A DNA stretch of 63,687 nucleotides, the filler included, from Octopus bimaculoides (Eukaryota): the NCBI RefSeq assembly GCF_001194135.2. It is 4 parts of 3 records of this genome, joined end to end, with 100 filler letters (N's around TTAATTAATTAA, not from the genome) between each part and the next. Parts side by side here need not be neighbours in the genome. Positions count along the whole stretch, not along the records: positions 57,698 to 63,687 come from NC_068995.1; 3 more parts are not named here. One strand, written 5' to 3'. The notes below the pieces were generated by a model. The model saw only the letters and a list, made by a program, of their open reading frames with translations, had not been told where the DNA came from and searched no databases. Position 1 is the stretch's first letter. Each line of letters begins with the position of its first letter. This document shows positions 59,844 through 60,234 of this stretch, one piece after another. A program made the translations under genes and the position numbers.

Positions 59844-60234
59844 AATTGTCACTAAATGTGACTAGCGTGTTAGAACACTTACATTGCTAGAAATAAGAGC
59901 TAAAAAGCTCTGATGCTGTGGTTAAAGCACATAATTCTATACATATGTACTGACCGTAATCTCCCTAACGCACCAGGTGAGAATTTCCTATACTGATCGG
60001 TCAGTTTCGGCTAATTACGTAGCCTCATCAGTAGGAACCGCTCGACTCGGCTTATCCGGATTTGCTTCCCTGTCAGTACATATGTGTTCACATAAAGATC
60101 TATGGATGATTTAGCGTATCGTTAAATTGTCACTAATATGGCTAGGGTGTAAGAACACGTCCTTTGCTAGAAATAAGAGCTGAAAAGCGCTAATACTGTA
60201 ATTAAAGCACATAATTGTATATATGTGTCCTGAC
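59844..60234. repeat. ~110-bp direct repeats (59844-59954, 60125-60234; period 281) flanking the hammerhead cassette
   Basis: aattgtcactaa...tgctagaaataagagct.aaaagc...ttaaagcacataatt...ctgac; roughly 80% identical by eye. Confidence 0.9.
59985..60037 (-). ncRNA. Canonical type I hammerhead ribozyme
   Basis: 5'-UUCCUA CUGAUGA GGCUA cguaau UAGCC GAAA CUGA ccga UCAG UA UAGGAA-3'. All core nucleotides present and three perfectly paired stems; predicted GUA cleavage between plus positions 59991 and 59990. Confidence 0.85.

What the first reader, a model, noticed from the sequence alone, without database searches (positions are those of the whole stretch)
59985..60037. Intact canonical type I hammerhead ribozyme in a 281-nt retrozyme-like unit
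Seen: on the minus strand, stem I UUCCUA/UAGGAA, core CUGAUGA, stem II GGCUA/UAGCC with loop CGUAAU, GAAA, stem III ACUGA/UCAGU with loop CCGA and a GUA triplet. Stem I extends through a 3x3 internal loop into GAG/CUC, the kind of element that docks loop II in natural type I hammerheads. The motif lies between ~110-bp direct repeats 281 bp apart. Known: metazoan non-LTR retrozymes are short tandem or terminally redundant units with type I hammerheads that give small circular RNAs and are thought to be mobilised by Penelope-like RTs. Inference: this is a cephalopod retrozyme or PLE-derived unit. The ribozyme is perfectly paired while its flanking repeats are ~20% diverged, which hints at selection or recent homogenisation.
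Basis: partly seen in the sequence, partly recalled or inferred. Interest (0 to 1): 0.85.

Follow-up and report, generated by a model that had tools for sequence, protein, structure and literature searches.

The report
Lone hammerhead ribozyme in repeat relic
The minus strand carries a complete, textbook self-cleaving hammerhead RNA motif, but it sits alone in a 1.4-unit remnant of a short repeat, so it is most likely a dead copy of an already known kind of animal mobile element and not a working or new system.

Summary
At 60037..59985 (minus strand) there is a complete type I hammerhead:
- stem I of 6 bp, core CUGAUGA, stem II of 5 bp, GAAA, stem III of 5 bp;
- a GUA cleavage triplet, with the cut between 59991 and 59990.

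It is not a chance match. A relaxed descriptor gave 0 hits in 3000 shuffles. A covariance model built only from four validated coral, mussel and axolotl retrozyme hammerheads hits it alone (27.6 bits, E about 7e-7). Rfam's curated thresholds are not reached.

The direct repeats are real: 59843-59954 and 60123-60234, 85% identical, 280 bp apart. The locus holds only 1.4 units and one ribozyme, and neither flank resembles the ribozyme-bearing segment. It therefore fails the working definition of an active non-LTR retrozyme, which needs at least two consecutive ribozyme-bearing units. Its transcript could be cut once but could not release a circle.

The piece contains no Penelope-like RT or GIY-YIG remnant. 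The hint of selection does not hold: a neutral simulation gives P = 0.05-0.16 for an intact motif, before allowing for the fact that intact motifs are what a scan picks out.

Verdict: a new member of a known kind, probably a relic. Interest is modest.

The parts
59985..60037 (-). Type I hammerhead ribozyme motif: stem I 6 bp, CUGAUGA, stem II 5 bp with a 6-nt loop, GAAA, stem III 5 bp with a tetraloop, GUA triplet.
   Evidence: Read directly. Only descriptor hit, with 0 in 3000 shuffles. Only significant hit of the model from validated retrozyme HHRs, 27.6 bits, E 6.7e-7. Native fold -17.7 kcal/mol against an MFE of -19.3.
59990..59991 (-). Predicted self-cleavage site, between A17 (59991) and U1.1 (59990).
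   Evidence: Position follows from the hammerhead consensus (RUH then cut) applied to the sequence. Cleavage itself was not tested.
60041..60043 (-). GAG, 5' arm of the possible stem I extension beyond the 3x3 internal loop (CGG 60040-60038 / AUU 59984-59982).
   Evidence: Not formed in the MFE of the 392-nt context. A role in loop II docking is inference only.
59979..59981 (-). CUC, 3' arm of the possible stem I extension.
   Evidence: It pairs elsewhere in the long-context fold.
59955..60122 (-). Single-copy segment U (168 nt, GC 0.45) that carries the ribozyme and lies between the two repeats.
   Evidence: No significant similarity to the 186 nt upstream or the 183 nt downstream.
60123..60234 (-). 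Direct repeat R1, the upstream copy on the ribozyme strand. Weak similarity may extend to about 60246.
59843..59954 (-). Direct repeat R2, the downstream copy. It is 84.7% identical to R1, start-to-start spacing 280.
60072..60085 (-). 5' arm (ACAUAUGUACUGAC) of a perfect 14-bp helix that encloses the whole ribozyme domain.
   Evidence: In 1000 shuffles of the 392-nt element, none reached 14 nt.
59941..59954 (-). 3' arm (GUCAGUACAUAUGU) of the enclosing helix. It is the first 14 nt of R2. The R1 equivalent has 3 mismatches.
   Evidence: A circular 280-nt monomer built with R2 folds at z = -3.1, and with R1 at z = 0.05.

Best explanation
This is a structurally intact, canonical type I hammerhead ribozyme inside a 392-bp partial tandem with the layout R1-U-R2, which is 1.4 copies of a ~280-bp low-GC unit. 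I read it as an old, truncated, non-propagating copy of a short hammerhead-bearing repeat of the non-LTR retrozyme / Penelope-related kind.

How it would work (inferred):
- If the minus strand is transcribed, the RNA folds into the three-helix hammerhead.
- It then cuts itself after A59991, leaving a 2',3'-cyclic phosphate and a 5'-OH.
- In a master copy with two or more units, two such cuts would release a ~280-nt monomer.
- A tRNA ligase (RtcB type) can circularise that monomer, and a retroelement reverse transcriptase can copy it back into DNA.
- Integration of such products typically leaves partial tandems like this one.
- At this locus only one cut is possible, so no circle can be released.

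Shown: the motif, its non-randomness, its match to validated retrozyme hammerheads, the repeat layout, the single ribozyme, and the enclosing 14-bp helix.

Inferred: catalysis, family membership and mobilisation.
For: - Motif and coordinates.
- Uniqueness and chance controls.
- A covariance model built from four validated retrozyme HHRs of coral, mussel and axolotl (sequences; alignment; model) hits only this site in the piece, full length, 27.6 bits, E 6.7e-7. The next hit has E 1.2.
- Direct repeats at 280-bp spacing.
- Unit size and GC 0.39-0.41 lie within the published range for metazoan non-LTR retrozymes: 150-450 bp, GC below 45-50%.
- A 5-bp stem III with a tetraloop is the stable monomeric form. 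The 1-bp helix III of the minimal Penelope hammerheads is different.
- Solo or monomer derivatives are a recognised fraction of retrozyme families.
- Partial tandems are the typical footprint of Penelope-type integration.
- A significant 14-bp helix encloses the ribozyme domain, in line with the compact folds of such RNAs.
Against: - No second copy of the unit or of the ribozyme could be found anywhere, so 'repeat family' rests on the local 1.4-mer alone.
- There is no tandem array by TRF and no second HHR.
- No convincing target-site duplication was found.
- No Penelope-like coding remnant lies in the 6-kb piece.
- Rfam gathering thresholds are not reached.
- The thermodynamic MFE prefers an alternative pairing of the CUGAU core with the 3' strand of stem III, by 1.6 kcal/mol.
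Confidence: 0.6

Rival explanations
1. It is a fragment of a different hammerhead-bearing element: either the terminal pseudo-LTR region of an autonomous Penelope-like element, or a dispersed SINE-like element of the Schistosoma Sm-alpha type. On this reading R1 and R2 are pseudo-LTR-like or independently inserted repeats, and they are not two units of a tandem.
For: Type I hammerheads occur in the pseudo-LTRs of Penelope-like elements, and retrozymes appear to derive from them. The R-U-R layout with 15% diverged repeats is also what a partial tandem of any Penelope-mobilised sequence looks like. No tandem array is present here.
Against: No RT or GIY-YIG trace in six frames of 57698-60700. The ribozyme lies in the single-copy segment, not in the repeated part. 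Stem III is 5 bp, unlike the minimal 1-bp helix III of Penelope hammerheads. No tRNA-like head was found.
Confidence: 0.2
2. It is a host-retained (domesticated) cis-cleaving ribozyme kept intact by selection, for example to process a host transcript, as with the intronic hammerheads of amniotes.
For: The ribozyme has no stem mismatch although the flanking repeats differ at 15% of sites. Domesticated type I hammerheads exist in amniotes.
Against: Neutral survival of the intact motif is not improbable (P = 0.05, or 0.16 with one mismatch allowed), and the scan selects intact motifs. No gene or exon is evident nearby. The surroundings are a decayed LINE tail and microsatellites.
Confidence: 0.07
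3. The ribozyme belongs to the neighbouring LINE, as an antisense hammerhead downstream of the 3' end of this LINE family.
For: The ribozyme lies about 190 bp beyond the 3' UTR of a LINE fragment on the opposite strand. In a distant relative (L002), a marginal minimal-hammerhead-like motif sits directly after the LINE 3' end, also antisense (L002 11114-11151, 14.3 bits, E 0.04-0.07).
Against: The L002 motif is defective: it has a non-pairing base at the foot of stem II and a weak stem I. Three other relatives (L003-L005) show nothing near their LINE tails. LINE homology ends at about 59795, before R2. L001 and L002 share no similarity with R or U.
Confidence: 0.03
4. It is a chance motif with no evolutionary relation to hammerheads.
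For: A rough count gives on the order of 0.1-1 motifs of this quality by chance in a 3-Gb genome if all loop lengths are allowed (my estimate, not a tool result).
Against: No relaxed hit occurred in 3000 shuffles of the 6-kb piece. The loops are compact and natural-like. The match to the independent model has E 6.7e-7. The motif sits in a repeat structure with an enclosing 14-bp helix.
Confidence: 0.01

Closest known systems
Metazoan non-LTR retrozymes (Cervera & de la Pena, NAR 2020, PMC7229834; Li, Clavereau & Pollet, bioRxiv 2026, 10.64898/2026.07.22.740005)
   Same: Canonical type I hammerhead with CUGANGA/GAAAY/RUH and perfect helices. Unit of about 280 bp, within the 150-450 bp range. 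Low GC (0.39-0.41). No coding capacity. Compact predicted fold around the ribozyme. A mollusc precedent exists (mussel, about 5000 copies).
   Different: No tandem array. Copy number, circular RNA and Penelope co-occurrence are unknown. Stem III (5 bp plus tetraloop) is longer than in the validated coral, mussel and axolotl examples.
Hammerheads in pseudo-LTRs of Penelope-like elements (Cervera & de la Pena 2014, cited; Craig et al. 2021, PMC8557442)
   Same: Type I topology, an association with direct repeats formed by partial tandem insertion, and an invertebrate setting.
   Different: Penelope hammerheads are mostly minimal, with a 1-bp helix III, and act as dimers. They lie inside the repeated pseudo-LTR next to an RT/GIY-YIG ORF. 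Here helix III is stable, the ribozyme is in the unique part, and no such ORF remnant is present.
Schistosoma Sm-alpha hammerhead (SINE-like element; structure 2GOZ; sequence recalled from my own knowledge)
   Same: Type I hammerhead with a 6-nt loop II and an interruption of stem I about 5-6 bp from the core. Here both stem I (6 bp) and stem II (5 bp) are one pair longer than in Sm-alpha, which would keep the two docking elements in register.
   Different: The internal loop is a 3x3 loop, not a one-sided bulge, and the loop sequences differ (CGUAAU against CAAAUA). No Pol III-type head was found. The tertiary contact is untested.
Rfam hammerhead families (RF00008, RF03152; clan CL00010)
   Same: The core and stem II align well. 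The RAGATH-1 model aligns all three helices in type I topology.
   Different: Scores are below the curated cut-offs: 26.7 against 48.5 bits, and 19.6 against 56.3 bits. The best-scoring model has the wrong topology (type III).

Membership tests
Hammerhead ribozyme, type I | Conserved catalytic core: CUGANGA, GAAA(Y), and an RUH triplet with H not G. | tested here: met
   CUGAUGA, GAAAC and GUA are all present. The criteria are as stated in the supplement of PMC7229834.
Hammerhead ribozyme, type I | Three helices around the core, with helix I open-ended, helices II and III capped, and an A15.1-U16.1 pair. | tested here: met
   Stems of 6, 5 and 5 bp with no mismatch.
Hammerhead ribozyme, type I | Reaches a curated Rfam gathering score. 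| tested here: not met
   Best score is RF00008 at 26.7 bits (cut-off 48.5), in type III topology. RF03152 scores 19.6 (cut-off 56.3). A type I model score is not shown, because only the best overlapping clan member is kept.
Hammerhead ribozyme, type I | Significant match to a structure model built from experimentally validated type I retrozyme hammerheads. | tested here: met
   Model R1, built from coral, mussel and two axolotl HHRs, gives 27.6 bits, E 6.7e-7, a full-length match, and is the only hit below E = 1 in the piece.
Hammerhead ribozyme, type I | Loop II to stem I internal-loop tertiary contacts. | tested here: inconclusive
   A 3x3 loop plus GAG/CUC exists at a suitable distance. 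It is not stable in the longer-context fold, and non-canonical contacts cannot be computed here.
Hammerhead ribozyme, type I | Self-cleavage in Mg2+. | not testable with these tools
   Needs in vitro transcription.
Non-LTR retrozyme | Tandem repeats with a type I HHR in at least two consecutive units (the definition of an active element). | tested here: not met
   One HHR only. There are 1.4 units. TRF finds no array. The flanks are unrelated to U. The definition is given.
Non-LTR retrozyme | Unit of 150-450 bp, non-coding, low GC. | tested here: met
   Period 280. GC 0.39-0.41. No domain hits.
Non-LTR retrozyme | Multi-copy family in the host genome. | not testable with these tools
   Exact-pattern scans of three collections gave 0 hits. 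Protein-proxy searches found nothing relevant. The window's ORFs are absent from the protein collection.
Non-LTR retrozyme | Expressed as linear and circular monomer RNA. | not testable with these tools
   No transcript data are available.
Penelope-like element (autonomous copy or its pseudo-LTR) | RT plus GIY-YIG ORF between pseudo-LTRs. | tested here: not met
   Six-frame Pfam scan of 57698-60700 found only a weak zf-RVT hit, which belongs to the LINE tail.
Penelope-like element (autonomous copy or its pseudo-LTR) | Hammerhead located within the repeated pseudo-LTR, usually minimal (1-bp helix III) and in tandem. | tested here: not met
   The HHR lies in the single-copy segment. Helix III is 5 bp.
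SINE-like hammerhead element (Sm-alpha type) | tRNA-derived or Pol III-type head. | tested here: not met
   ARAGORN finds no tRNA-like sequence in the piece. A and B boxes were inspected by eye only.

The most novel reading that the evidence does not exclude
This copy, or its family, would be kept intact because the cleavage is used, either for making circular RNA or for processing a host transcript. The full-text searches run here found no paper that links hammerhead ribozymes with cephalopods.
Probability: 0.12. Interest if true: 0.5.

Novelty: new member of a known kind. Interest (0 to 1): 0.3.

Why it matters
Type I hammerheads in short animal repeats are well documented from cnidarians to amphibians, including a mussel. 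One more example changes little on its own. Its value is practical. The 168-nt ribozyme segment and the 280-bp unit are ready-made queries for surveying the source genome for arrays, circular RNAs and Penelope partners. This hammerhead has a stable 5-bp helix III, so it is a good candidate for efficient cleavage as a monomer. If the genome is indeed a cephalopod's, it would add a lineage that the papers searched here do not report.

Tried and rejected
- Rfam scans of the piece and of narrow sub-windows gave only sub-threshold hammerhead hits. The many 'miRNA' hits lie on TG/TA microsatellites and are spurious.
- I looked for homologous copies by exact-pattern scans of the ribozyme and of the most conserved R block in metagenome, prokaryote-genome and viral collections.
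- As a protein proxy for DNA search, I used the 59-aa open frame across the ribozyme, which found nothing.
- The 62-aa frame across R1 returned only spurious WD40 and repeat proteins.
- Eleven of the window's ORFs, looked up by exact sequence to identify the source genome, are not on record.
- I tested a link to the LINE. Relatives were fetched (L001-L005), but they share only the LINE tail up to about 59795. Apart from one marginal motif in L002, they show no hammerhead.
- A second, degenerate ribozyme in either flank was rejected by alignment against shuffles.
- A search for a target-site duplication found only an 8-mer with one mismatch, at unsuitable positions.
- Selection on the ribozyme was rejected as not significant.
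- Pol III-type or tRNA-like heads: none found.
- The bacterial promoter and terminator scan is not relevant to a eukaryote. It only pointed to the hairpin-plus-T-run in R.

Full report
**1. The observation**

Reading the minus strand and checking each segment by script gives this layout:

5'-GAG CGG UUCCUA CUGAUGA GGCUA CGUAAU UAGCC GAAA CUGA CCGA UCAG U A | UAGGAA AUU CUC-3'

- The motif spans 60037..59985.
- Stem I has 6 bp.
- Stem II has 5 bp, starts with G10.1-C11.1 and has a 6-nt loop.
- Stem III has 5 bp including A15.1-U16.1, with a CCGA tetraloop.
- The triplet is GUA, so the predicted cut lies between 59991 and 59990.

Chance is excluded.
- The bare core pattern occurs once in the window and in none of 100 shuffles.
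- My relaxed three-helix descriptor (stems of at least 4/3/3 bp, loops up to about 40 nt) finds only this site, with stems 6/5/5.
- The same descriptor finds nothing in 3000 dinucleotide-preserving shuffles of the 6-kb piece.

**2. Is it a hammerhead by independent criteria?**

Rfam does not reach its curated thresholds.
- The best hit is Hammerhead_3 at 26.7 bits (cut-off 48.5), forced into type III topology.
- The RAGATH-1 hammerhead model aligns all three helices in type I topology, but at only 19.6 bits.
- Overlapping clan members are suppressed, so the type I model's own score is not visible.

I therefore built a model from four experimentally validated retrozyme hammerheads: coral Amil224, mussel Mg353, axolotl Ax353 and Ax330.
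- The sequences come from Supplementary Table 2 of PMC7229834.
- The alignment is, and the structure-annotated model is.
- Searched with filters off, the model hits 59985-60037 (minus) full length at 27.6 bits, E 6.7e-7. The next hit has E 1.2.

The motif also satisfies the authors' own acceptance rule: perfect helix topology plus CUGANGA / GAAAY / RUH.

Thermodynamically, the native fold is -17.7 kcal/mol.
- A competitor at -19.3 kcal/mol pairs the CUGAU of the core with the AUCAG of stem III. This is possible because stem III repeats the CUGA of the core.
- Such competitors are common for natural hammerheads, and the energy model ignores tertiary contacts. Still, this is a real caveat for activity.

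**3. Anatomy of the locus**

Two direct repeats flank the ribozyme: R1 60123-60234 and R2 59843-59954.
- Start-to-start spacing is 280.
- They are 84.7% identical, with K2P 0.172 (9 transitions, 8 transversions, 2 gap columns).

Between them lies a 168-nt segment, U (59955-60122), that holds the ribozyme.
- U has no significant similarity to the 186 nt upstream of R1 or the 183 nt downstream of R2. Alignment scores were no better than shuffles: 215 of 500 and 408 of 500 shuffles scored at least as high.
- TRF reports no tandem array.
- The locus is therefore R-U-R: 392 bp, 1.4 units, one ribozyme, GC 0.39.

A perfect 14-bp helix encloses the whole ribozyme domain: ACAUAUGUACUGAC 60085-60072 with GUCAGUACAUAUGU 59954-59941.
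- None of 1000 shuffles of the element produced an inverted repeat that long.
- The 3' arm is the start of R2. The R1 version has three mismatches.
- Accordingly, a conceptual circular 280-nt monomer folds unusually well when built with R2 (-71.3 kcal/mol, z = -3.1). Built with R1 it does not (z = 0.05).
- The GAG/CUC extension of stem I forms in a 71-nt context but not in the 392-nt MFE. The proposed docking element is plausible but unproven.

**4. Surroundings**

On the plus strand, about 59160-59795 is the decayed 3' end of a LINE ORF2 plus its 3' UTR.
- It has a CCHC-type zinc knuckle (weak zf-RVT hit).
- Several frameshifts and stops interrupt it.
- Relatives at 49-62% amino-acid identity occur in eukaryotic contigs of ENA marine metagenome assemblies, some labelled TARA.
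- Nucleotide homology to L002 runs to about 59795 and does not reach R2.

The ribozyme is antisense to this LINE. About 45 bp separate the LINE 3' end from R2, and the ribozyme itself lies about 190 bp beyond it.
- I found no convincing target-site duplication around R-U-R.
- Six-frame Pfam scans of 57698-60700 show no reverse transcriptase or GIY-YIG remnant apart from the LINE knuckle.
- No tRNA-like sequence is present.
- From about 60530 to 62270 the piece is microsatellite.

**5. Comparative evidence**

None could be obtained.
- Exact scans for the ribozyme and for the best-conserved block of R in the metagenome, prokaryotic-genome and viral collections returned nothing.
- Open frames across the element, used as protein proxies, gave no candidates or only spurious repeat proteins.
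- Copy number, covariation and the cephalopod attribution therefore remain untested. The marine origin of the LINE relatives fits a marine animal and says no more.

**6. Selection?**

- Suppose R1 and R2 were identical at insertion. Each lineage then carries about 0.086 substitutions per site.
- Mutating the 53-nt motif at that rate keeps core and all pairs intact in 5.2% of 200,000 trials. Allowing one stem mismatch raises this to 15.9%.
- That is not significant, and a scan that reports intact motifs enriches for such survivors.
- The divergence does show that the duplication is old.

**7. Interpretation**

The best reading is an old, truncated copy of a short hammerhead-bearing repeat of the non-LTR retrozyme / Penelope-related kind.

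The published picture:
- Non-LTR retrozymes have type I hammerheads in 150-450-bp low-GC tandem units.
- Two cuts release a monomer, and RtcB-type ligase circularises it.
- Penelope-like reverse transcriptases are the suspected mobilisers.
- Active elements need at least two consecutive ribozyme-bearing units.
- Solo 'monomer' copies are regarded as non-transposing offspring.
- Penelope-type integration characteristically leaves partial tandems.

This locus matches in ribozyme class, unit size, GC content and partial-tandem layout. It fails the two-ribozyme criterion.
- Its transcript could be cut once, but no circle could be released.
- It works like a retrozyme hammerhead. Its membership in a retrozyme family is unproven.

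The rival explanations and my weights for them are in the Rival explanations section. They are a Penelope terminus or SINE-like element, a domesticated ribozyme, a LINE-associated antisense hammerhead, and chance.

**8. Novelty and score**

Type I hammerheads in metazoan repeats, including a mollusc, are established (PMC7229834).
- My full-text searches found no paper reporting hammerheads in cephalopods.
- That is absence in one library, and the organism here is unverified.
- I rate the finding as a new member of a known kind, with interest 0.3.

Noticed in passing
window 59160-59795 (+): Decayed 3' end of a LINE ORF2 (CCHC knuckle, then the conserved C-terminal tail) with several frameshifts and stops, followed by its 3' UTR. 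Relatives at 49-62% amino-acid identity occur in eukaryotic contigs of ENA marine metagenome assemblies, some labelled TARA.
   Followed up: yes
L002 11114-11151 (-): A marginal minimal-hammerhead-like motif (CUGAUGA ... GAAAC GUA; 14.3 bits, E 0.04-0.07) lies directly after the 3' end of the related LINE and antisense to it, the same relative orientation as in the window. It has a defective stem II base and a weak stem I. L003-L005 show nothing comparable.
   Followed up: partly
window 60284-60301 (-): The hairpin CUGAGUUCGGAUCAGGUA resembles stem III plus the cleavage triplet (CUGACCGAUCAGUA). It lies 13-17 nt from where an upstream unit's stem III would fall. The surrounding sequence shows no significant similarity to U, so it may be coincidence or the last trace of an upstream ribozyme.
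   Followed up: partly
window 59902-59906 and 60183-60186 (-): Each repeat R has a hairpin (AGAGC-loop-GCUCU) whose loop is a T-run on the ribozyme strand: TTTTT in R2 and TTTT in R1. If the unit were transcribed by Pol III, these runs would end transcription within each unit, which argues for Pol II or read-through transcription of any multimer.
   Followed up: no
window 59095-59157: A 10-N assembly gap (59095-59104) is directly followed by an (AAT)n microsatellite, at the 5' truncation point of the LINE fragment.
   Followed up: no
window 60530-62270 and 63617-63687: Dense TG/TA/TATG/TATC microsatellites account for all the high-scoring Rfam 'miRNA', 'SCARNA7' and 'snoRNA' hits, which are below gathering score and spurious.
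   Followed up: yes
window 58000-58700: This block is richer in GC (0.40-0.44) than its AT-rich surroundings. It has no Pfam, tRNA or Rfam signal, and its nature is unknown.
   Followed up: no
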